A stretch of 64,000 nucleotides of DNA from Macrostomum lignano (lineage: Eukaryota): positions 426,568 to 490,567 of the forward strand of contig NIVC01000655.1 of NCBI GenBank assembly GCA_002269645.1. Reading direction: 5' to 3'. Below, one piece after another: positions 619-18,519 of the stretch. Position numbers and translations under genes: made by a program. The notes under the pieces are model-generated. The model was not told where the DNA came from, searched no databases, and saw only the letters and a list, made by a program, of their open reading frames with translations. Every line of letters begins with the position of its first letter. Positions within the stretch are counted from its first letter, which is position 1.

Positions 619-2855
619 ATGCCGTCAAGCAGCGCTCTGTCCCAATCCTCCGGTGGTCGCCGGGCCCAGCAGCAGCGCTACCGGACCATCTGCCCGCACT
701 CCACAGTCGACGAGAGTCTGTTCGGCGAGCCCCATCGGGTCACTCAGCGCAAAGATCACCAGAAGCAACAGCAGGCGTCCGGTGGGGACGCCATCGAACG
801 AGAGGCCGCCCAACGTCAGGCGCGTCGCCGTCAGCGTCTGAGCGGCAGCCCGCCTCGGGAGCGCGTCCAGGTGGTGACCAAAGACCTCATACGTGACCTG
901 ATCGTGCCGCACGAGGATCCGAGTGGCAACTCGCTGGTGCTGCCGTTCTCCGAGTACCTGCGCATTAAGGCCAAGAGCCGCTTCTCGACCGAGGAGGAGC
1001 GCGAGGCGCAGCACCAGGCCGCCAAGAGGCACGAGGAGGAGGAGCAGGACGCCGTGATGCAGCGCAAGAACAAATTCAAGCAGCTGGACGTGAGCAGGAA
1101 GAAGAGCGAGAAGCTCACGGATCTGGAGGAGGAGGCCAAGGAGAAGGCGGAGCACCTGCTGCAGAAGGCGATGCTGCAGCGTCAGGAGCAGGAGGACGAG
1201 ATCAAGCGGCTCAACGAGCTCATTCTCAATGCCAAATGCCACGCCATCCGCGACGCCCAGATTCTCGAGCGCGAGGAGATGGGCCGCGAACTACGCGACG
1301 AGGAGGTGCGTCTGGACGAGATGATGGAGATCGACAGGCGCAACGCCATCCGCATCCAGGAGGAGATCGAGAAGAAGCGGCGCGAGAACGAAATGGTCGG
1401 CGCCTCGAAGATTGTGGAGCAGATTCACGAGAACGAGCAGGACAAACTGCTCGAACTCGAGCGCAAAGATCAGGAGAACGTGGCCATGGCCAAGTACCTG
1501 GAGCGCCTGATGGAGGAAGAGAAGGTGAAGCTGGAGCGGAAGCGAGCTGAGCAGGACCGGTTGAGAGAGGAACTCAACAAAGCCAACGAAGAAATCATGA
1601 AGCGCAGGGAGGTCGTGAAGGTCCAGGAGAAGGCCCTGGAGGAGAAGGTGCTGCAGTTCCAGCGCGACAAAGCCGAAAGGGAGGCCGCCTACGAGGCGGA
1701 GCAGGAACGAATCAAGGCCGAGAAGGAAAAGGAGGTGGCCCGACTCCGCGCTATGCAGGAGCGGGCGAGCGACGAGCAGGCTGAGCGGGACGCGCTGAGG
1801 GCGAAGCGGGCGGCTGAGGCAGCCGAACGCGAGTGGCGCCGCAAGGAGGCCGAGGAGGCCCTGAAGAGGAAAGAAGTGGAGGCCGACCTGCAGGTGAGTT
1901 TTTCACTTCACTTTAGTTGTTCAGTTGTTATAGGATGTTTAATCCCCCCGTCCCTAAACTCGTTCCCGTCACAAACCCTCAGAACCCCAGCCCCGCCACA
2001 GCCTACACCCCGGAATTTCTACCCCAGCCCCGCCACAGCCTACACCCCAGAATTCCTACCCCAGCCCCGTCACAGCCAGCCCCCTCAGAACTCCTACTCC
2101 AGCCCCGCCACAGCCTACACCCCAGAATTCCTACCCCAGCCCCGTCACAGCCAGCCCCTTCAGAACTCCTACCCCAGCCCCGCCACAGCCTACACCCCAG
2201 AATTCCTACCCCAGCTTCGTCACAGCCAATCCCTCAGAACTCCTACCCCAGCCCCGCCACAGCCAACCCCCCAGAACTACTAGACCCGGCCTCGACACAG
2301 TTAACCCTGCCCCTTCCCTGCCACAGACAACCCCAAGAAGTCCTCTCCCAGACCCGCCATAATCAACTCCCGAACTCCGAATCCCAGCCCCGTCACAGCC
2401 AACCCCCCGGACTCCTACCCAGCCCAGCTTAACCGCGCCCCAACCTGTGACCTGCACACTCCCAGGAGGCCCGGGCGGCTCAGCTGTCCCAGAAGCAGCA
2501 CTTCTTGGCGGCGCAGGCGGCTCGCGAGCGCGCGGAATTCGAGCGAGTCCTGAAAGCCCAGAAGGAGCTGATTGAGAAGGACAAGCGTGAAGAGGCCGAT
2601 CACGACGTTCGCCGGAGAAAATACAACGACGAAATCCGTCGCCAGATTCAGCAGAAGGAGCGCGAAAAGATCCAGGAGCGCAACGCATTCTTCGAGGAGG
2701 CAGTTAAGACCGATGAGGAGGCCAGACTGCGCAGGATGCGGCTTGAGGAGGCCAAGAATCGCAAATTGGCCGAACTGCGCGCGGCCGGCATCCCGGAGAA
2801 ATACCTGGCCCAGGTGGAGCGCAAGATTCACCAGCCGCAGCACGTTTCCTCGTGA
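619..2855 (+). CDS. CFAP45: Cilia- and flagella-associated protein 45 (CCDC19), about 554 aa, 2 exons
   Basis: join(619..1893,2466..2855); donor CAG|GTGAGT, acceptor CTCCCAG|, phase 0. Long E/K/R-rich coiled coil with EIKRLNELILNAKCHAIRDAQILE and AARERAEFERVLKAQKELIEKD, typical of the CFAP45 family. Confidence 0.93.
1975..2440. repeat. C-rich minisatellite in the CFAP45 intron
   Basis: Tandem variants of CCCCAGCCCCGCCACAGCCTACACCCCAGAATTCCTA (about 37-38 bp). Confidence 0.85.
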
Positions 2856-8822: not shown

Positions 8823-9767
8823 CAATCGTGGAAAACCATAGAATAGTCTTGTCGGCTGACAGTTTAAAATGAATTCGATAATGTGAAATTTGAGCTTGTC
8901 TGTCAGCGACCGAACCGAGACAGACAAAGCATTCCGACTGAAAACGGACACAAAATGAAGCAACAAGGACGCCAGCTAGCAGGTTCCGACAAAAAGAGTA
9001 AAGAGAAAAGTTGGTTTGCAGTCTTTTGGAATTCAATTCGCATTAAAATGAAAATGCAGAGCTAAAAGAAGCCGTGCAGCATGCAGTTGCACCAGTCACC
9101 CTTAATAACAGTTAAATGAGGCATGGGTAAGTAGGCAAGGAAGGGAAGCGAGGGCACCTGTCGATCTGGCCAGGCAAGCAAGATTTCGCTTCAAACAGCA
9201 AGAAAATGAGCACGAACCACGAGCAAGCCCGCTCAGTGTAATTCCGATTCCTGACTTTGTTTCGGAAAATTACCTTGGGTCATCATCGATTGGATTATTT
9301 GTTTTCTCAGCAGCGCACTGCTCGTTCGTGTGCGAAAATCCTCGCCGTTGTCTCTTCATGGACAGTTCCGATTCAGACAAAGAAATCGCCGCGGTAAGGT
9401 GAGCTTGCACACAGCTGCTCAAATGATTCTGCGGGAAATTTCTTCGTTAAACGTGAGCTGGCATGCTTTACTGTTTAGGCAGCAGGCGATCGTCCTCCTT
9501 GTAAGACGATAGCCAATGTGGCGAAAATAAAAGCAGACAGATGCTTGCTTGATCCTGGCATTTTCTACTCGACTTGAGCAAGAAGGCAAGATAAATACCC
9601 TTATTTCATGTTAGTTATGCTTTCAGTATATTAAATCAACTTAAGAGCAAATATGTATCTATTTTTACGCAACTTCCTACTAGAAGTAATAGAAACACAA
9701 AAGTAATAAATACAGTGGTTTAGATTGCGTATTTGTCGCAACTGCTGGTGTTGAGAGTAAACAAGCA

Positions 9768-10042
9768 AGATCGGGATTCCCTAAACTTAATTTCAAGATT
9801 TCCACAAATTCAAGATCGGGATTCCCCAAACTCAAGATTGTGATTCCTTAAAATCATGATCGGCATTTCCCCACCTCAAGATCGGGATTTCCCCAAACTC
9901 AAGATCGGGATTCCCTAAACTCAAGATCGGGATTTCCCCAAACTCAAGATCGGGATTTCCCCAAACTCAAGATCGGGATTTCCCCAAACTCAAGATCGGG
10001 ATTCCCTAAACTCAAGATCGGGATTCCCCAAACTCAAGACAG
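9768..10042. repeat. 22/23-bp minisatellite
   Basis: Tandem TCAAGATCGGGATT(T)CCCCAAAC. Confidence 0.9.
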
Positions 10043-10092
10043 GAATTCCATAAAATCCAAAAAGTCCGTAACATAAGCGAGTTAAAAAGTGG

Positions 10093-11593
10093 CTACTTAT
10101 CGCCCCCATTCAGTTTGTCGCTTTCACTGTCAGAGAAAATCCCTTTTAAAGGATAGTTGGGATCTTCAGTCGGATCAAAGCTGACTGACTGACTGAAACG
10201 CAGGCATCGCGGCTTCATCTGCTGCTCGTTGGCAACCTTTCTAACCAGGGCCTCGCGGTCCAGGCCATAGACGGTGAGGTTTTTGGAGTTGAAATTCTCC
10301 GCATTGTCGGACTCCGAGGGCTTCGGCGCACATGTTTTCTGCCGTTTAACAGGTGACAATTTTCGCTCATCAACAGGCGACGGCTTGTACAGTTCTTTGA
10401 GGCGTGCCTCCGACTCTTCCACCGTTTCAAATCGATCTTTAAGTTTGGCCAATTCCAACAGTCTGTCAACAGCTGCTTGGCCACCAGAACCGGCGGTGCG
10501 ATCGATGCTGAATATTAACGGCGGCACTGTGGACATCAGCATGCGCTGGTGCAGCTGGCTTCTGAAATGTCGATAAATTTGTCGATAGAAGCGTCGATAA
10601 ATATGTCGATAAAAATGCCAATAAATAAGTTGACAGAATTGTCGATAAATATGTCGATAGAAGTGCTGGTAAATTTGTCGATAGAAGCGTCGACAAATAT
10701 ATGGACATAATTGTCGATAAATATGTCGGTAGAAATGTCGATAAATATGTCGGTAGAAATGTCGATAAATATGTCGGTAGAAATGTCGATAAATATGTCG
10801 GTAGAAATGTCGATAAATATGTCGGTAGAAATGTCGATAAATATGTCGGTAGAAATGTCGATAAATATGTTCATAGAAGTATCGATAAATATGTCAATAG
10901 AAGAGTCGATACATGCCACTAAATATGTATCTTTTGTGTCGAAAAAAAGTCGCTAAACGTGTCGATAGACATGACTAAAGACACAAATACTGAAGCAGAG
11001 CAAAGCAATTAAAGCAAACGCACCGAATTTCCGACGCATTGGAAAGCAGAGCGGCGTCAATCTCGGAGTCCAGTTCGGGACTGCCTGTTGTCATCCAACT
11101 GACTTGCACCTTGGTCAGGTTGATGTCCATTCTCACCTGAATAAAATAGGAGATAGGTAGCCGTATCTTCAAAGGCATAAACTGAGGATCTGGGAGGCTG
11201 GCCCAGCAACTGAGGATCTGGGAGGCTGGCTTAGCAACTGAGGATCTTGGGAGGTTGGCCCAGCAACTGATACTCTGGGGACAGCGAGTTTCACACCTTG
11301 CTAATCTGAACACTCTGCAAGCAGCGACCAACGCAGCCGGAGATGAAGACCTCCTGCAGGGCATTCCTCAGCATGCTGGACAGCACAATGCTGCGCTTCT
11401 CCTTCTGCAAATTGACCGGTCGGTTGCGCAAAGCCGCCTTCTCCATGTCTGACTTGTCTTTCCGCTGCTTCTTCCGCTCCAGCCACTGGTGGTCTTCGAA
11501 CCAGGGGTGCCTGCAGTTCACAGCGGTGCTGGATTTGAATATTATCTGTGTCTATCTATCTATCTATTTATCTATTTGTCTATCTATCTATCC

Positions 11594-11628
<35 letters not shown>

Positions 11629-12057
11629 CATCTATCTGTCTATCCATCTATCTGTCTATCCATCTATCCATCTATCTGTCTATCTATCTATCTAGCTATC
11701 TGCCTATCCATGCTTGGGCGCAACCTAGGGATTCACCCGGCCGTTTCTATTGGCAACACACACATGTAAGTCGCTATTGGACAGAATAGTAGTCACGTGA
11801 CTGCTCTCAGCCAATAGCGACTTACATGTGTGTGTTGCCAATAGAAACGGCCGGGTGAATCCCTAGGTTGCGCATGTATCTGCCTATCAATCTATCTTAT
11901 GAATTCACTTATCAATTTACACTTACTTTTTAACAGATGACAACTGGCGCGCACAACCGCTGACGCCAAGCGCCTTGCAGAACACCGCAGTAGCAGCGCA
12001 TGCAGAAGGCACGGATTGCAGCAAGTGCCGATAGAAACTTGTCAAAGTATAATGAGA
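10093..12057 (-). CDS. RBFA: Mitochondrial ribosome-binding factor A, 4 exons, about 315 aa; no genomic ATG found
   Basis: complement(join(10093..10561,11024..11136,11297..11528,11927..12057)); GT-AG junctions with consistent phases 2/0/2. Spliced product: SHYTLTSFYRHLLQS...GCARQLSSVKNTAVNCRHPW...LSSMLRNALQEVF...VQISKVRMDINLTKVQVSW...QRMLMSTVPPLIFSIDR...AAVDRLLELA, matching the RbfA domain pattern plus a likely targeting peptide. The exon-2 acceptor was chosen for frame. Confidence 0.82.
10568..10915. repeat. 24-bp minisatellite in RBFA intron 3
   Basis: Tandem TGTCGATAAATATGTCGGTAGAAA. Confidence 0.92.
11181..11270. repeat. 28-bp minisatellite in RBFA intron 2
   Basis: ACTGAGGATCTGGGAGGCTGGCCCAGCA, about 3 copies; same unit as 17030-17260. 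Confidence 0.85.
11550..11710. repeat. (TCTA)n microsatellite
   Basis: Direct reading; in RBFA intron 1. Confidence 0.95.
11718..11873. mobile_element. 156-bp palindromic MITE-like element
   Basis: Perfect 63-bp inverted arms (11718-11780 and 11811-11873) around a 30-bp spacer containing AGTCACGTGACT. Confidence 0.75.
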
Positions 12058-12171
12058 CTGCAAGACAGGTAAATAAATATACGTGTAGAAAAAATTATTG
12101 TACTATCTGCAATAAGTTAAAGATAAGATAAGATAAAAACGACGACAGGTAAAGATAACGTTCAGGTGAGA

Positions 12172-12385
12172 TAAGTCCGGCCAGCAGATAATTGGCAGGT
12201 GAGATAACAGTCAGGCTGGCAGATAATTGGCAGGTGAGATAACAGTCAGGCTAGCAGATAATTGGCAGGTGAGATAACAGTCAGGCCAGCAGATAATTGG
12301 CAGGTGAAATAACAGTCAGGCCAGCAGATAATTGGCAGGTGAGATAACAGTCAGGCCAGCAGATAATTCGCAGGTGAGATAAGAT
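12172..12385. repeat. 35-bp minisatellite
   Basis: Tandem CAGATAATTGGCAGGTGAGATAACAGTCAGGCCAG. Confidence 0.9.
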
Positions 12386-12871
12386 TAATCAGCTGGAAAG
12401 GAGTTAGCCTTCTAAGAACAAAAATGGGTAATTTGGCTTATTTTTAAATATTCTGAACAGAATCTGAGTCTGTGGGCTCAGGGCAAGATTATATTCTTAA
12501 TTAAAATATGCTATTCAAATTATGTATTGGTTTGAAAACTTGATGGAAACCTAATTAATAGCACCATTGGATTAGTGTAAACGCTGCTCAATCAATTACA
12601 AACAGAAGCTAAAAATAACAATTTTAAATCGCATGCATAATCAAAAAATGAATAATTTCAATTTTACAAAATATTGAGGCAAGTAATGCTTAGGGAAATT
12701 ACTCAGGCACATTGTTGCAACACACGAAATGCAGACAGGATTATCAAAACCCAGTAAAATTAATTTGAGTCAAATAAATAAAACACAAAAATATTGATCA
12801 ATTTGCAGTAAAATTAATCTGATTAGATTTTTAGAGTATTGAGAACTACCTACCTATTACTAAGGAAATTT

Positions 12872-13392
12872 AATAACTGCCAAACAGCTACTTCCGATAT
12901 GCTAACAACTGCCAAACAGCTACTTCCGGTATGCTAACAACTGCCAAACAGCTACTTCCGGTATGCTAACAACTGCCAAACAGCTACTTCCGATATGCTA
13001 ACAACTGCCAAATAGCTATTTCTGGTAGGCTAATAACTGCCAAACAACTACTTCCGATCGCTAATAACTGCCAAACAGCTACTTCCGATCGCTAATAACT
13101 GCCAAACAGCTACTTCCGATCGCTAATAACTGCCAAACAGCTACTTCCAATCGCTAATAACTGCCAAAAAGCTACTTCCGATCGCTAATAACTGCCAAAC
13201 AGCTACTTCCGGTATGCTAATAACTGCCAAACAGCTACTTCCGATCGCTAATAACTGCCAAACAACTACTTCCGATCGCTAATAACTGCCAAACAGCTAC
13301 TTCCGATCGCTAATAACTTCCAAACAACTACTTCCCATCGCTAATAACTGCCAAACAGCTACTTCCGGTATGCTAATAACTGCCAAACAGCT
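12872..13392. repeat. 31/32-bp minisatellite
   Basis: Tandem GCTAATAACTGCCAAACAGCTACTTCCGATC. Confidence 0.92.
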
Positions 13393-13515
13393 TTTAATGG
13401 CATTTTAATTAGAATGATGCATTCAATTGATGAATGTTTGAAACCATTCTGTACTATAAAATTGCACAGAAAATGAATAATCAATCATTGAAAACCAGTA
13501 GATCCATTGTACACA

Positions 13516-16500
13516 TCAAACTGGCTTAGAAGAAAAGTCCATAGTTAGCAGATGAGCCGGTATAGCGCCGCTGTCGCCATTCAACGGCGTCATTGGCAAC
13601 GTGGACGCCGAGGGGGCGGCATGGGTCGGCGAAGAAGAGGAGGAACTTCCGGTGCCAAAAAAGCGTTGGAAACTGCAAATAATAACAGCAATATATTAGC
13701 GATGATAAAAATGTGCCAACACAACCTTCCTGATAAAGCATTATAAATGTAAAGTTAAAAACTACTGTAAAAAGTGTAAAAACTACTGTAAGAAGGCCAA
13801 TAAATACCGAAATTTTTCAAGAGTTACGCTCGTAATTTATGTTTATAATGATCTGTATCTGTACCTGAGCTGTCCATTCAGGTAGAGCAGCCCTTCTACC
13901 CACCCCCTTATCTCAGGTAGAGCAGCCCTTCTACCCACCCCCTTATCTCAGGTAGAGCAGCCCTTCTACCCACCCCCTTATCTCAGGTAGAGCAGCCCTT
14001 CTACCCACTCCCTTATTTCAGGTAGAGCAGCCCTCCTACCCACTCCCTTATTTCAGGTAGAGCAGCCCTTCTACCCACTCCCTTATCTCAGGTAGAGCAG
14101 CCCTTCTACCCACTCCCTTATTTCAGGTAGAGCAGCCCTTCTACCCACTCCCTTATCTCAGGTAGAGCAACCCTTCTACCCACTCCCTTATCTCAGGTAG
14201 AGCAGCCCTTCTACCCACTCCCTTATCTCAGGTAGAGCAGCCCTTCTACCCACTCCCTTATTTCAGGTAGAGCAGCCCTTCTACCCACTCCCTTATCTCA
14301 GGTAGAGCAGCCCTTCTACCCACCCCCTTATCTCAGGTAGAGCAGCCCTTCTACCCACCCCCTTATCTCAGGTAGAGCAGCCCTTCTACCCACCCCCTTA
14401 TCTCAGGTAGAGCAGCCCTTCTACCCACCCCCTTATCTCAGGTAGAGCAGCCCTTCTACCCTCCCTAATCTCAGGTAGAGCAGCCCTTCTACCCTCCCTA
14501 ATCTCAGGTAGAGCAGCCCTTCTACCCTCCCTAATCTCAGATAGAGCAGCCCTTCTACCCTCCCTAATCTCAGGTAGAGCAGCCCTTCTACCCTCCATAA
14601 TCTCAGGTAAAGCAGCCCTTCTATCCCTAGTGACATAAAAACAAGAGTGATAATTAGAACTCGAATTCATCAATAAAAAATATCATTTATTAAAAGACGG
14701 CGACTAACTACTGCTCACCTACTGAAATGCAACAGATATTTTATTTATAAAAATGGAAACTTTAAGAAGTGTATTCGGTATTAAAAAAGTAACAGTAAAA
14801 AATTATTAAGTTACTGGCAACAGTTAAAAATTGTTTCACACAATAGAAAGACCGGCCAAGAAAGTGGCAGTGCTAAAAATGCTAAGACTATAAAATCACA
14901 CAACAAACAAGCGTGGTAAAAATTTCACAACTAAAAAATTATTCGTCAAAAAAAGTACATAGAAACTTAGGCCCAACTTCGGCGACGCCTTAATCTCCTG
15001 CGCAGGTGGCAAATCAGGCGCACTATTCTGCAATAAGAATTAGTTAATTAATAGTAATAAACTTATTCGATACATATCGGTATAGCGAAATCATGTACGA
15101 AAGTATTGGTCCGTATTGTTGATTTTTGAAACTCTAGTAGCGTAATAGTTATTAAAATCATATTTGTGATCAAATTAAAATAGATTTTGAATTTGGCCAC
15201 TTTTAGAATATTTCGATACATATCGGCAAAAACTAAAATTAATTATATTTTATAATAATATAATAATATAATTATAATAATAAAAGATTATTTATAGCGT
15301 TTTTCGACACATATCGGCTAAAATTTAATAAATTGATCAATAAATATTCCTCCAAACATTTTGGCTAAAAAGTATCATTTATACTCTTTTTCGATACATA
15401 TCGGCTAAAATAAGAACGATCATTTATCAATTTAACTAATTAAGACTGAAATACCGGTCAGAGAGAAGAGCTTTAGCATAGTGTGATGATAAGCATTAAA
15501 ATTCGAACGGAAAGTTTTTCAAATAAAATTGCTCATCATACTACTTAACACAATTTTGTATTAGCAAATAAATACTTACAAGTATTTAATGCCTAAATCG
15601 CTGCTGTTGCTCTTTTGATTAGAAGCATCTCCGTTTAAACCGCCGCCGTCATTTTTTTCGGCGCCCGACGCTTTGCAATCGCGTTGCGCAGGCGCCGGCG
15701 AGGCTTGAGTAGACGTTAAACCGACGCCGGGGTCCCCTCCTAGTAACGGAGCAGACGGTAAAGCTTGATAGAAACTTTGCGACGAAATCACTTCGAAACC
15801 GGATAGCGGCGTCGAATTCGATGGATCCTCCTCGATAGAGGATGTCTGCCGTGCAGCGCCCTGGCGGTAAGCCTCTGCTAGTTCCTCTTCTGCTTCTAAT
15901 AGGCGAGCTTTGAGTTCGTTTCGCTCGGCTAGGACGGCCCGAAGCTCGGCCAGGGTGAAACGAGGCCGGTTTGGATCGAGAGAGTTCGAAGATGCGTCTG
16001 AAACCTGCTGCTGCTGCTCCCACTGCTTCTGCTGCTGTTGTTGCTGCTGCTGCTGCTTCTGCTGCTGTTGTTGCTGAGGCTGCTGTGGCGAAAAAGACAG
16101 TTGGCTCAATGGGGAGGCCTGCAAAGTGTTCGTTAAGACTATCACATATTATATATAAATATGTATTTTATAGTATTTGCGGTTTTAGAGCATGAGTGAG
16201 ATGGATGGATTGAAATATTAAAGAACAAAAAATGAATGAAATTATAATTAGGGCAGCAAAGATCAAAGAATGAATGAGATTATAATTGGGGCAGCAAAGA
16301 TCAAAGAATGAATGAGATTATAATTGGGGCAGCAAAGATCAAAGAATGAATGAGATTATAATTGGGGCAGCAAAGATCAAAGAATGAATGAGATTATAAT
16401 TGGGGCAGCAAAGATCAAAGAATGAATGAGATTATAATTGGGGCGGCAAAGATCAAAGAATGAATGAGATTATAATTAGGGCGGCAAAGATCAAAAGGCA

Positions 16501-17584
16501 AGTAGCGCAAGCGCACTCACAGCCATATCGGCATCTCCGCGATGCAGTTCAGGCTGACAGTCGCTGCTGTCAGAGTCGGATCGACCATCACAGAGTTTAT
16601 CTTCCAAATCGCCCACGCCACCGCCGCCGCCGCCGTGCACAGACTTGCTAAGCCGCTTCATCAGATCGGCATTGAGGCTGGCTAGGCGGTCACTCTGAGC
16701 TTGCAGGGCCTCGCAGTCGGCCCGGCTGTTGGCCAGTTCGCGCCTCAGAATTCGAGTCTCGTCGCGCTGGGCGTTTAGCGCCGATTTCAGCCTGGCAACG
16801 ATGAGCATCTGCTGCTGTTGTTGACGCTGCTGGACAGGCGATGAGGTTGCGGAACCGGCCGACTGCTCGGAGGCCGAGGATGAGTTCCCTCGGCGAGCTT
16901 CGCTTAGCGCCTGTTTGAGACTGCTGTTCTCTTCGCGAAGGTGCTGCAGCTCGCGGCGCCACTCCTGATCGGCCTGGGAGATGAGGAATATTCTCTTTGG
17001 GTGATTCAGAATGCCAGAATACCTGTCTGGGGATCTGGGAGGCTGGCCCAGCAACTGAGGATATGAGAGGCTGGCCCAGCAACTGAGCGATCTGGGAGGC
17101 TGGCCCAGCAACTGAGGATATGGGAGACTGGCCCAGCAACTGAGCGATCTGAGAGGCTGGCTCAGCAACTGAGGATCTGGGAGGCTGGCCCAGCAACTGG
17201 GGATCTGGGAGGCTCGCCCAGCAATTGAGGATTTGGGAGGCTGGCCCAGCAACTGGGGATCATGCACTTAGTGTGTAAACGCCGAGAGAAGACACTCACC
17301 TGCTCCATTTCCCTCTCAAAGCGGCCCCTATCAGTGAGGCGGGCAGCCCTCTCCAGCTCCAGCTTATCAATGCGCTGCTGCAATAGCACTGCCTCATCAG
17401 CCGCAGCCTCAGCCCTACTAGTGAGCAATTCCAGATTCTCCAGAGCTGAAATCACTTTAGGCATCAGGCCTGACAAGGATTCTGGCCCATGCTGATCAAT
17501 GAGTATTTCAAACTCTTTGCCAATGACTGACGCCAAGTCATAGACATCAGTGATTGATTGGATATTAGGCTTGGATAGTGGCAT
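13516..17584 (-). CDS. RILPL1: RILP-like protein (RH1 and RH2 domains), about 477 aa, 4 exons
   Basis: complement(join(13516..13672,15580..16118,16521..16973,17300..17584)); GT-AG, phases 0/0/2. RH1: DVYDLASVIGKEFEILIDQHG..LMPKVISALENLE; RH2: DPNRPRFTLAELRAVLAERNELKARL; C-terminal GIKYFFQRFF resembles the family GIKRLFSFF motif. Exact paralog identity (RILP/RILPL1/RILPL2) unresolved. Confidence 0.85.
13878..14620. repeat. 35/33-bp minisatellite in RILP-like intron 3
   Basis: Tandem TCTCAGGTAGAGCAGCCCTTCTACCCACTCCCTTA, shifting to a 33-bp variant after about 14450. Confidence 0.93.
16232..16497. repeat. 38-bp minisatellite in RILP-like intron 2
   Basis: Tandem GAATGAATGAGATTATAATTGGGGCAGCAAAGATCAAA. 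Confidence 0.92.
17030..17260. repeat. 28-bp minisatellite in RILP-like intron 1
   Basis: Tandem ACTGAGGATCTGGGAGGCTGGCCCAGCA. Confidence 0.9.
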
Positions 17585-18519
17585 TGTAATCTGTAAATTT
17601 TTAAAACTTTACAGAAAAAAACAGTTAAGTCTTTTATTGAGGCTAGTGGAAAACTTTGCTAGATAAATGATCAATATAATGAATAAAATTCAAGCAAAGA
17701 TTAATCAATATAGATATTCAGTAAATACTAGTAAACTCTCTATAAACTAGCTTAACACTAAACACTTGATACTAATCTTCCTAAACACAATTTTTTTTAG
17801 ATTTTTAATAACCCATCTGTTGATCATCTATTAAACAATGGAAAAAAACATCATCCATTTAAAAAAATTTTGCCACCTATTAAAATATGCTGATTGGAAA
17901 ATAGCTAAAATTGAAATTGTCTTTCTATTTTAATGTAGAAATATAATGGGTAGCCATATTTTTTAAAAAATATTGTTGTGTTAGACAATATAAACATACA
18001 AAAATGGTATCTCACTATAATTTTTATGACTTGCAAACATTATTTTTATTATGAAAATAAGCTTCACAATGTATAACTAAATTTTTTTTCAAAAAGTCTT
18101 GTCTGCCAATAGAAAAAAAGCAGTAGATAATTTGACTATATTTTAGTCTAACAAATAAAATTTCTAACAATGTTTTTAACAAATGAAAAAAGTAAGACAA
18201 TTATTGCTATTGCCATATTAAATTTTTGTTAATGATAATAATTTTATAAGTAACATTTATTAAGCACTATGCGATATATTTACTTTAAGTTTAATATAAA
18301 ACTAGACTAAGAAATAGCCAAGTTTAAGCATAGGCCTACTTGAATAGGTAGACCCTTAACAACTCACATTTGAACTCACATTTGTTCATGGGCAAAATTT
18401 ACCTGGTCCTATTGTCTATAGATGGCAAATATTGGTAAGAAAAAGCTTAGCATACAAATCTCAATCAATAGGCAAATCTGAGACTCAATAGGGCCTAGGC
18501 AATACAATATATTTGTAGG

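What the first reader, a model, noticed from the sequence alone, without database searches (positions are those of the whole stretch)
10093..13672. RBFA lacks a genomic start codon: candidate operon with spliced-leader-supplied AUG
Seen: the first RBFA exon begins right after a clean acceptor (TTTACCTGTCTTGCAG|TCT CAT TAT, 12057) in phase 0 with no in-frame ATG until well into exon 2, which would delete the basic, hydroxylated targeting peptide. The 1.46 kb to the co-oriented RILP-like stop is AT-rich DNA and minisatellites with no obvious ATG exon. Established: flatworm spliced leaders end in AUG and this AUG can initiate translation; trans-splicing resolves polycistronic transcripts. Inference: RILP-like and RBFA form an operon, and SL addition creates MSHYTLTSFYRHLLQS.
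Basis: partly seen in the sequence, partly recalled or inferred. Interest (0 to 1): 0.82.

Follow-up and report, generated by a model that had tools for sequence, protein, structure and literature searches.

The report
Spliced-leader start codon for flatworm RBFA
In the flatworm Macrostomum lignano, the mitochondrial ribosome-assembly gene RBFA has no start codon of its own and almost certainly takes it from the trans-spliced leader, a mechanism already documented in flatworms, so this is a clean but ordinary example.

Summary
The window is the last 64 kb of Macrostomum lignano contig NIVC01000655.1. RBFA lies on the minus strand in four exons. Exon 1 starts at 12057, directly after a TTGCAG acceptor. 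An in-frame TAG lies 15 codons upstream, and the first in-frame genomic ATG is codon 66, in exon 2.

Exon 1 is really coding. Its lysine/tryptophan motif (K28, K44, W47) is conserved in human mitochondrial RBFA and in other orthologues, all of which begin with their own Met further upstream.

The M. lignano spliced leader ends in ...TTGCATG. Its acceptor motif, [T/C]TNCAG, fits this site. Joining the leader here puts its AUG in frame as the first AUG of a 309-codon ORF.

GenBank annotates all three genomic copies as 5'-partial. One copy starts exactly at the acceptor.

The upstream RILP-like gene also appears to be trans-spliced. It carries the same transcriptional-unit prefix as RBFA (Mlig000198 g2 and g3). 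It ends 1458 bp upstream, or 716 bp once tandem repeats are subtracted, which is inside the published operon threshold of 1 kb.

I saw no SL-containing read, so SL addition and the polycistronic precursor remain inferred.

The mechanism has been known since Cheng et al. 2006. This is a new member of a known kind, of low interest.

The parts
12058..12085 (-). Pyrimidine-rich tract and TTGCAG acceptor; proposed SL trans-splice site of RBFA
   Evidence: Read directly from the sequence. Fits the M. lignano SL-acceptor motif [T/C]TNCAG (PMC8629364). Identical in copy L003; retained, with changes in the pyrimidine tract, in the diverged paralogue L002.
12103..12105 (-). In-frame TAG 15 codons upstream of the acceptor; closes the frame in unspliced RNA
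11927..12057 (-). RBFA exon 1 (131 nt, SHYTLTSFYRHLLQ...SSVKK); no in-frame ATG
   Evidence: K28 and K44 are invariant and W47 nearly invariant in the orthologue alignment. Human mt-RBFA aligns from residue 25.
11297..11510 (-). RBFA exon 2; holds the first in-frame genomic ATG (codon 66, 11446-11444, context gacATGg)
11024..11136 (-). RBFA exon 3 (core of the RBFA domain)
10093..10561 (-). RBFA exon 4 and TAG stop (10095-10093)
   Evidence: The CDS range 12045-10093 equals GenBank PAA79056.1.
12058..13515 (-). 1458-bp spacer between the RILP-like stop and the RBFA acceptor; proposed intercistronic RNA/outron
   Evidence: 36.8% GC; no credible ATG exon.
12163..12382 (.). 35-bp minisatellite (6.3 copies) inside the spacer
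12871..13392 (.). 31-bp minisatellite (16.6 copies) inside the spacer, starting right after the ATTAAA signals
13393..13409 (-). Two ATTAAA hexamers (13409-13404, 13398-13393), about 110-120 nt after the RILP-like stop; likely poly(A) signals of the upstream cistron
   Evidence: the function is inferred
13516..13672 (-). Last exon of the RILP-like gene (..FFQRFFGTGSSS...SSKPV, TGA 13518-13516)
   Evidence: matches GenBank PAA79057.1
13516..17590 (-). RILP-like gene (RH1 + RILP domains). Exons 17590/17584-17300, 16973-16521, 16118-15580, 13672-13516. Preceded by a TTACAG acceptor at 17596-17591.
   Evidence: The paralogue protein starts ITMPLSK, the first codon after the AG.

Best explanation
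RBFA in M. lignano is an SL-dependent ORF.

1. The pre-mRNA carries an unpaired 3' splice site (TTGCAG, 12063-12058).
2. The spliceosome joins the 35-nt spliced leader (...CAATTTATTGCAUG) to exon 1 at 12057.
3. The terminal AUG of the leader becomes codon 1. Translation gives MSHYTLTSFYRHLLQS..., a 309-residue mitochondrial-type RBFA with a basic, acid-free, Ser/Thr-rich N-terminal presequence.
4. The RNA that is trans-spliced is most likely a polycistronic precursor. It starts upstream of the RILP-like gene (itself trans-spliced at 17590) and runs through the repeat-filled 1.46-kb spacer. 3'-end formation at the ATTAAA signals and SL addition then separate the two cistrons.

Shown here: the gene model, the absence of a genomic start codon, that exon 1 is coding, the phase match with the SL AUG, the fit to the acceptor motif, and the annotation facts.

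Inferred: SL addition at this site, use of the SL AUG by ribosomes, mitochondrial import, and the common precursor.

My confidence is about 0.85 for the SL-supplied AUG and about 0.6-0.65 for the operon. The figure given below is for the SL-AUG claim.
For: - Species and SL: the protein is 100% identical to M. lignano PAA79056.1. The SL ends in ATG and the SL acceptor motif is [T/C]TNCAG (PMC8629364).
- No genomic start codon: in-frame TAG at 12105-12103, first in-frame ATG at codon 66.
- Exon 1 is coding:
  - Human mt-RBFA (7PNX chain a) aligns over query 25-199 and chain 33-207, E = 7e-09.
  - Seven orthologues align from query positions 13-46.
  - K28 and K44 are invariant and W47 nearly invariant. 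Every orthologue starts with its own Met 35-70 residues before the motif.
- On the SL-joined mRNA the SL AUG is the first AUG and opens a 309-codon ORF.
- Annotation, from a pipeline that trims the SL and cuts at SL peaks (PMC5730564):
  - All three RBFA copies are marked 'partial'.
  - PAA82023.1 begins SHYS..., exactly at the acceptor.
- Operon:
  - Locus tags are Mlig000198g2 (RILP-like) and g3 (RBFA) on this contig, and Mlig018635g1 and g3 on a second contig.
  - Synteny is conserved in three copies.
  - The spacer is 1458 bp minus 742 bp of tandem repeats, leaving 716 bp. This is under the 1-kb repeat-adjusted rule.
- Precedent:
[quoted passage not shown] 2006, as cited in PMC9851317).
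  - Macrostomum annotators treat the SL ATG as a start codon (PMC10468722).
Against: - No SL-containing read or cDNA for this gene was available. The exact MSHYT... protein is not in the protein collection.
- The annotated CDS on this very contig starts 12 nt inside exon 1 (LTSFY, 12045), not at the acceptor. I cannot explain this.
- The SL AUG sits in a weak Kozak context (ttgcAUGu) and Met66 in a strong one (gacAUGg), so some leaky scanning is plausible.
- On the operon:
  - 716 bp is well above the roughly 100-bp mode of M. lignano intercistronic spacers.
  - On the third contig the two genes carry different unit prefixes (Mlig023722 and Mlig018635).
  - My reading of the locus-tag prefix as 'same transcriptional unit' could not be controlled against the neighbouring genes.
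- The three copies are too similar for conservation to separate signal from neutral sequence: the spacer is 96% identical, the exons 97-99%.
Confidence: 0.85

Rival explanations
1. RBFA is trans-spliced and uses the SL AUG, but it is transcribed from its own promoter inside the 1.46-kb AT-rich spacer. It would be a monocistronic gene with an outron, not an operon with RILP-like.
For: - About 60% of SL trans-spliced M. lignano genes are not in operons.
- The spacer, at 716 bp without repeats, is far from the roughly 100-bp intercistronic mode.
- The non-repeat spacer is 28.9% GC, like promoter or intergenic DNA.
- On contig NIVC01000501.1 the two genes carry different unit prefixes.
Against: - The genes share a transcriptional-unit prefix with consecutive gene numbers on two contigs.
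- The published operon criterion is met.
- PMC8629364 notes that assembled units tend to split in repeat-rich intercistronic regions. That would explain the third contig.
Confidence: 0.3
2. A cis-spliced upstream exon with a genomic ATG, in the spacer or further upstream, joins the acceptor at 12057 and supplies the start codon.
For: - Eight ATG..|GT phase-0 mini-exons can be drawn in the spacer.
- RILP-like exons 1 and 2 also end in phase 0, so an in-frame cis junction is formally possible.
- Parasitic flatworms often share acceptors between cis- and trans-splicing (PMC12582326).
Against: - None of the eight candidates has the GT[G/A]AG donor, and all are 15 codons or shorter.
- The longest is frameshifted into a stop in paralogue L002, which still keeps an intact RBFA ORF.
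- The RNA-based annotation found no such exon in any of three copies and left the CDS 5'-partial.
Confidence: 0.05
3. Translation mainly starts at the first genomic ATG (Met66, 11446-11444), by leaky scanning or on RNA that is not trans-spliced. The product is a 243-residue RBFA without the N-terminal extension, and exon 1 is effectively 5' UTR.
For: - Met66 has a strong context (G at -3, G at +4), while the SL AUG has U at -3 and U at +4.
- The Pfam RBFA domain (residues 87-177) would be intact.
Against: - Residues 25-65 are homologous to the N-terminal part of human mitochondrial RBFA and other orthologues.
- The frame is open from the acceptor onwards, and there are no indels in exon 1 between paralogues.
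- An out-of-frame AUG at 12001 would intercept scanning ribosomes.
- The product would lack the presequence-like segment expected of a mitochondrial factor.
Confidence: 0.07
4. Non-AUG initiation inside exon 1, for example at the TTG (codon 5) where the GenBank CDS on this contig begins, without any contribution from the SL.
For: - GenBank PAA79056.1 begins at LTSFY (12045).
- Near-cognate initiation exists in trans-splicing animals (PMC9851317).
Against: - The GenBank record is flagged 'partial', so it is not a claimed start.
- The paralogue record begins four codons earlier, at the acceptor.
- On an SL-joined mRNA an AUG precedes this codon in frame.
Confidence: 0.03

Closest known systems
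Flatworm SL 3'-terminal AUG used as initiator methionine (Cheng, Cohen, Ndegwa & Davis 2006, J Biol Chem 281:733; 'slORFs' of PMC9851317)
   Same: The SL ends in AUG. The acceptor is in phase, so that AUG opens the ORF. There is no genomic in-frame AUG upstream of conserved coding sequence.
   Different: That work was done in Schistosoma mansoni with cDNAs and translation assays. Here the species is the free-living M. lignano, the gene is RBFA, and no RNA or protein data were seen. The Met supplied heads a presumed mitochondrial presequence.
M. lignano SL trans-splicing and operons (Wudarski et al. 2017, PMC5730564; Ustyantsev & Berezikov 2021, PMC8629364)
   Same: Same species and same SL. 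The acceptor fits [T/C]TNCAG. Both genes are co-oriented and trans-spliced, with a repeat-adjusted spacer under 1 kb and repeats inflating the raw distance. The annotation is already split into genes g2 and g3 of one unit.
   Different: The spacer (716 bp adjusted) lies in the upper tail, not at the roughly 100-bp mode. Those papers do not discuss this locus or SL-AUG-dependent ORFs.
C. elegans operons (SL2-resolved)
   Same: A polycistronic precursor is resolved by 3'-end formation of the upstream gene together with SL addition to the downstream one.
   Different: M. lignano has a single SL with no SL1/SL2 specialisation. The nematode SLs do not end in AUG and do not donate the start codon. 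Nematode spacers are about 100 nt.
Human mitochondrial RBFA (PDB 7PNX chain a and related mt-SSU assembly intermediates)
   Same: The proteins are collinear (query 25-199 to human 33-207, E = 7e-09). They share the N-terminal KKxxW[FY]E motif, the RBFA/KH-like domain and a C-terminal extension.
   Different: Identity is only about 25-30%. The human gene has its own genomic ATG.

Membership tests
SL trans-spliced gene of M. lignano | [quoted passage not shown] | tested here: met
   TTGCAG at 12063-12058; motif from PMC8629364.
SL trans-spliced gene of M. lignano | No upstream cis donor paired with that acceptor | tested here: inconclusive
   No spacer candidate has a GT[G/A]AG donor, and the best one is broken in a paralogue. 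Distant donors, such as RILP-like exons 1 and 2, cannot be excluded from DNA alone.
SL trans-spliced gene of M. lignano | RNA reads or cDNAs carrying the SL joined to the exon | not testable with these tools
   No M. lignano RNA data were reachable. Proxy: the 5'-partial GenBank CDS of paralogue PAA82023.1 starts at the first base after the AG, from a pipeline that cuts at SL peaks.
SL-AUG-dependent ORF (Cheng et al. 2006 class) | The species' SL ends in AUG | tested here: met
   CGGTCTCTTACTGCGAAGACTCAATTTATTGCATG (PMC8629364). PMC10468722 calls the final ATG a translation start codon.
SL-AUG-dependent ORF (Cheng et al. 2006 class) | The SL AUG is in frame with the main ORF, with no stop between | tested here: met
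   The SL-joined mRNA has its first AUG in frame 0 and a 309-codon ORF.
SL-AUG-dependent ORF (Cheng et al. 2006 class) | No genomic in-frame AUG upstream of conserved coding sequence | tested here: met
   TAG at 12105-12103 and first ATG at codon 66. Conserved K28/K44/W47 lie upstream of Met66.
SL-AUG-dependent ORF (Cheng et al. 2006 class) | Translation shown to start at the SL AUG | not testable with these tools
   Needs ribosome profiling, N-terminal proteomics or a reporter assay.
M. lignano operon (criterion of PMC8629364) | Adjacent, co-oriented genes with no opposite-strand gene between them | tested here: met
   RILP-like then RBFA on the same strand in three genomic copies.
M. lignano operon (criterion of PMC8629364) | Repeat-adjusted intergenic distance under 1 kb | tested here: met
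   1458 bp minus 220 bp and 522 bp of tandem repeats leaves 716 bp. Only tandem repeats were subtracted; transposon masking was not done.
M. lignano operon (criterion of PMC8629364) | A precursor RNA spanning both genes | not testable with these tools
   Indirect only: shared unit prefix Mlig000198 (g2, g3) and Mlig018635 (g1, g3). The naming control failed.
Ribosome-binding factor A, mitochondrial type | RBFA domain above the Pfam gathering score | tested here: met
   PF02033, 40.2 bits against 34.7, residues 87-177.
Ribosome-binding factor A, mitochondrial type | Homology to experimentally characterised mitochondrial RBFA, including the N-terminal extension | tested here: met
   7PNX chain a, E = 7e-09, query 25-199.
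Ribosome-binding factor A, mitochondrial type | N-terminal mitochondrial presequence | tested here: inconclusive
   The composition fits: no acidic residue in 1-49, 5 K/R, 3 H, 10 S/T. The helical hydrophobic moment peaks at 0.43 over residues 4-21. No dedicated predictor was available.

The most novel reading that the evidence does not exclude
SL trans-splicing might act as a localisation switch for RBFA. Only SL-joined mRNA read from the weak-context SL AUG would yield the presequence-bearing mitochondrial form. Leaky scanning to the strong-context Met66, or RNA that is not trans-spliced, would yield an N-terminally truncated non-mitochondrial RBFA. One gene would then give two compartments, with the ratio set by RNA processing and start-site choice.
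Probability: 0.08. Interest if true: 0.5.

Novelty: new member of a known kind. Interest (0 to 1): 0.2.

Why it matters
The main value is practical. Gene models in trans-splicing flatworms that look 5'-truncated ('partial' in GenBank) can be complete once the SL's AUG is added. For organelle proteins, the missing Met decides whether targeting predictors see the presequence.

This locus is a tidy teaching case. The protein is conserved, collinear with its human counterpart, and has no possible genomic start codon.

It does not open a new question. SL-AUG initiation has been documented in flatworms since 2006. In M. lignano about 30-39% of genes are trans-spliced and about 15% lie in operons.

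Tried and rejected
- Rfam scan of the whole window: no hits, so no SL RNA gene or other known RNA is here.
- Search for an SL-like sequence in the window (18-mer, up to 3 mismatches): none, so the ATG is not supplied by a genomic copy of the SL.
- Exact look-up of the SL-initiated protein MSHYT...GDK: not in the collection. Only GenBank and UniRef genome-derived models exist for this gene, with no transcript-derived entries.
- Locus tags searched in the supplements of PMC8629364, PMC5816591 and PMC5730564, and in all full texts: nothing found.
- Control on what the 'MligNNNNNN' prefix means, using the neighbouring genes. My reconstructed 554-aa neighbour was not found by exact look-up. The EF-hand neighbour returned only a UniRef entry without a locus tag.
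- Bacterial-type promoter/terminator scan of the spacer: not meaningful for a metazoan.
- Cheng et al. 2006 itself is not held, so it is cited through PMC9851317, PMC12582326 and PMC5832876.
- Paralogue comparison to find conserved islands in the spacer: the copies are too similar (96% against 97-99%) to discriminate. It did show a frameshift in the best cis-exon candidate.
- Pseudogene reading: rejected. The ORF is intact in the window and in L002, although the L003 copy carries a 5-nt gap in exon 4.

Full report
**Identity of the sequence.** The spliced minus-strand ORF in the flagged interval is 100% identical to GenBank PAA79056.1. That record is 'hypothetical protein BOX15_Mlig000198g3, partial' from Macrostomum lignano. 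The locus recovered from GCA_002269645.1 (NIVC01000655.1, 426660-448612) is identical to the window in reverse orientation. The window is therefore the last 64 kb of that contig, and window coordinate + 426567 gives the record coordinate.

**The observation.**
- RBFA has four exons on the minus strand: 12057-11927, 11510-11297, 11136-11024 and 10561-10093. The splice sites are canonical and the reading frame is 308 codons.
- Pfam RBFA (PF02033) is matched above the gathering score at residues 87-177.
- Exon 1 begins immediately after ...tttacctgtcTTGCAG (12063-12058).
- In the same frame there is a TAG 15 codons upstream (12105-12103), with no ATG between it and the acceptor.
- The first in-frame ATG is codon 66, in exon 2 (11446-11444). 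The only ATG in exon 1 (12001) is out of frame.

**Is exon 1 coding?** This is the point on which the finding rests.
- An open stretch of 65 codons is only mildly unlikely by chance: P about 0.06 with its own composition, 0.014 with spacer composition.
- Homology is the stronger evidence. Human mitochondrial RBFA (PDB 7PNX chain a) aligns collinearly, query 25-199 to chain 33-207, E = 7e-09. The alignment includes SVKKHPWFED against KTKKKVWYES.
- An exhaustive HMMER search found 27 relatives. Seven of them align from query positions 13-46.
- In a ten-sequence alignment K28 and K44 are invariant and W47 is nearly so. Every orthologue starts with its own Met 35-70 residues before that motif.
- Translation must therefore start upstream of residue 28, inside or before exon 1. 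The genome offers no ATG there.
- Residues 1-49 contain no acidic residue, 5 Lys/Arg, 3 His and 10 Ser/Thr. That composition fits a mitochondrial presequence, but I had no dedicated predictor.

**The spliced leader.**
- M. lignano has one 35-nt SL, CGGTCTCTTACTGCGAAGACTCAATTTATTGCATG. The motif enriched at its acceptors is [T/C]TNCAG (PMC8629364). The RBFA site is TTGCAG.
- Joining the SL to 12057 makes the SL's AUG the first AUG of the mRNA, in frame with a 309-codon ORF.
- There is no copy of the SL in the window.
- The published annotation was produced by trimming the SL from reads and transcripts, mapping the SL sites, cutting 'transcriptional units' at those sites, and calling ORFs with TransDecoder (PMC5730564).
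- That procedure turns an SL-AUG-dependent ORF into a 5'-partial CDS, which is what GenBank shows for all three genomic copies of RBFA.
- In the diverged paralogue (NIVC01000501.1, PAA82023.1) the CDS begins SHYS..., at the first base after the AG.
- On the window's own contig the CDS begins 12 nt further in (LTSFY, 12045). I cannot explain that offset.

**Cis-exon alternative.**
- The spacer allows eight ATG..|GT mini-exons that would end in phase 0. All are 15 codons or shorter and none has the species' GT[G/A]AG donor.
- The longest (12712-12668) picks up a 1-nt insertion and a premature stop in the paralogue L002, whose RBFA ORF is nevertheless intact.
- RILP-like exons 1 and 2 also end in phase 0. 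A cis junction from them is formally possible but is not annotated in any copy.

**The operon.**
- The upstream gene (17590-13516, minus strand) has four exons and encodes a 477-residue RILP-like protein with RH1 and RILP domains. It equals GenBank PAA79057.1, BOX15_Mlig000198g2.
- Its first exon begins ATTACAATG right after a TTACAG acceptor (17596-17591). The paralogue's annotated protein begins ITMPLSK, again the first codon after the AG. This gene therefore also looks trans-spliced, with the SL AUG in frame two codons before its own ATG.
- The two genes carry the same unit prefix and consecutive gene numbers on this contig (Mlig000198 g2 and g3) and on NIVC01000500.1 (Mlig018635 g1 and g3). 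On NIVC01000501.1 the prefixes differ.
- Prefixes were given to clusters of transcriptional units at 95% identity, and the two genes are unrelated in sequence. A shared prefix therefore implies that at least one assembled unit spans both. I could not confirm this reading with the neighbouring genes.
- The spacer is 1458 bp. Of this, 742 bp are two minisatellites (12163-12382 and 12871-13392), which leaves 716 bp at 28.9% GC.
- Two ATTAAA hexamers sit about 110-120 nt after the RILP-like stop, just before the first minisatellite.
- Ustyantsev & Berezikov call a pair an operon when the repeat-adjusted distance between trans-spliced genes is under 1 kb. They also note that repeats inflate intercistronic distances and cause assembled units to split. 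The pair qualifies, though it is far from the roughly 100-bp mode.
- Synteny (EF-hand gene | RILP-like | RBFA | 554-aa gene) is the same in all three copies.

**What is known already.**
- All reported flatworm SLs end in AUG (PMC12582326).
- Cheng et al. 2006 showed that this AUG can serve as initiator. It is in frame in 28% of trans-spliced S. mansoni transcripts, and more than 40 cDNAs need it (as summarised in PMC9851317; also cited in PMC5832876).
- In Macrostomum, Wiberg et al. kept the SL's final ATG on reads and label it a translation start codon (PMC10468722).
- In M. lignano 30-39% of genes are trans-spliced and about 15% lie in operons.

**Verdict.** No RNA evidence could be reached with these tools, so SL addition, use of the SL AUG and the precursor remain inferences. 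The decisive data already exist publicly (SL-read tracks and RNA-seq). This is a new member of a known kind, of low interest. Its use is as a reminder that 'partial' flatworm gene models may be complete once the leader's AUG is added. One open point is whether Met66, which sits in a much better Kozak context than the SL AUG, gives a second, untargeted isoform.

Noticed in passing
window 17582-17596 (minus strand): The RILP-like gene starts ATTACAATG right after a TTACAG acceptor. An added SL would put its AUG in frame two codons before the genomic ATG (MITMPLSK). A paralogue's GenBank protein begins ITMPLSK. Both cistrons of the pair therefore have the SL AUG in frame.
   Followed up: partly
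window ~14967-15028 (minus strand): An alternative terminal exon of the RILP-like gene (ttattgcag|AATAGTGCGC..., encoding ..IVRLICHLRRRLRRRRSWA*). The GenBank models of both paralogues use it, but the window's own model uses the exon at 13672-13516. This is likely alternative 3' exon use.
   Followed up: partly
window 11718-11780 and 11811-11873: A perfect 63-nt inverted repeat with a 30-nt spacer inside RBFA intron 1. It looks like a foldback or MITE-like insertion.
   Followed up: no
window 11180-11270 and 17027-17261: The same 28-bp minisatellite unit (CTGAGGATCTGGGAGGCTGGCCCAGCAA) occurs in RBFA intron 2 and in RILP-like intron 1. Nearly every intron and spacer of this locus holds a tandem array of its own: 9766-10039, 10564-10911, 11551-11701, 13878-14623 and 16220-16495.
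   Followed up: no
L003 (NIVC01000500.1) 11480-11943: This near-identical copy of RBFA has a 5-nt gap in exon 4. GenBank annotates it as a truncated 210-aa product ending KELYKPC. It is either an assembly error or a decaying duplicate in this hidden-polyploid genome.
   Followed up: partly
window 9500-10092 (minus strand): There is no AATAAA or ATTAAA within 590 nt downstream of the RBFA stop. A 22/45-bp minisatellite begins 54 nt after the stop, so the RBFA 3' end is undefined from the sequence.
   Followed up: no
window 12045 versus 12057: The GenBank CDS of RBFA on this contig begins 12 nt inside exon 1 (LTSFY). On the diverged paralogue L002 it begins at the acceptor (SHYS); copy L003 also begins LTSFY. 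The RILP-like CDS shows a similar 3-nt offset (TMPLSK against ITMPLSK). This may be an artefact of SL trimming or multi-mapping, but it is unexplained.
   Followed up: no
window 619-2855 (plus strand): A convergent downstream gene encodes a 554-aa Glu/Arg/Lys-rich coiled-coil protein. My single-intron reconstruction (intron 1894-2465) is not an exact match to any protein in the collection, so the annotated splicing differs from it.
   Followed up: partly
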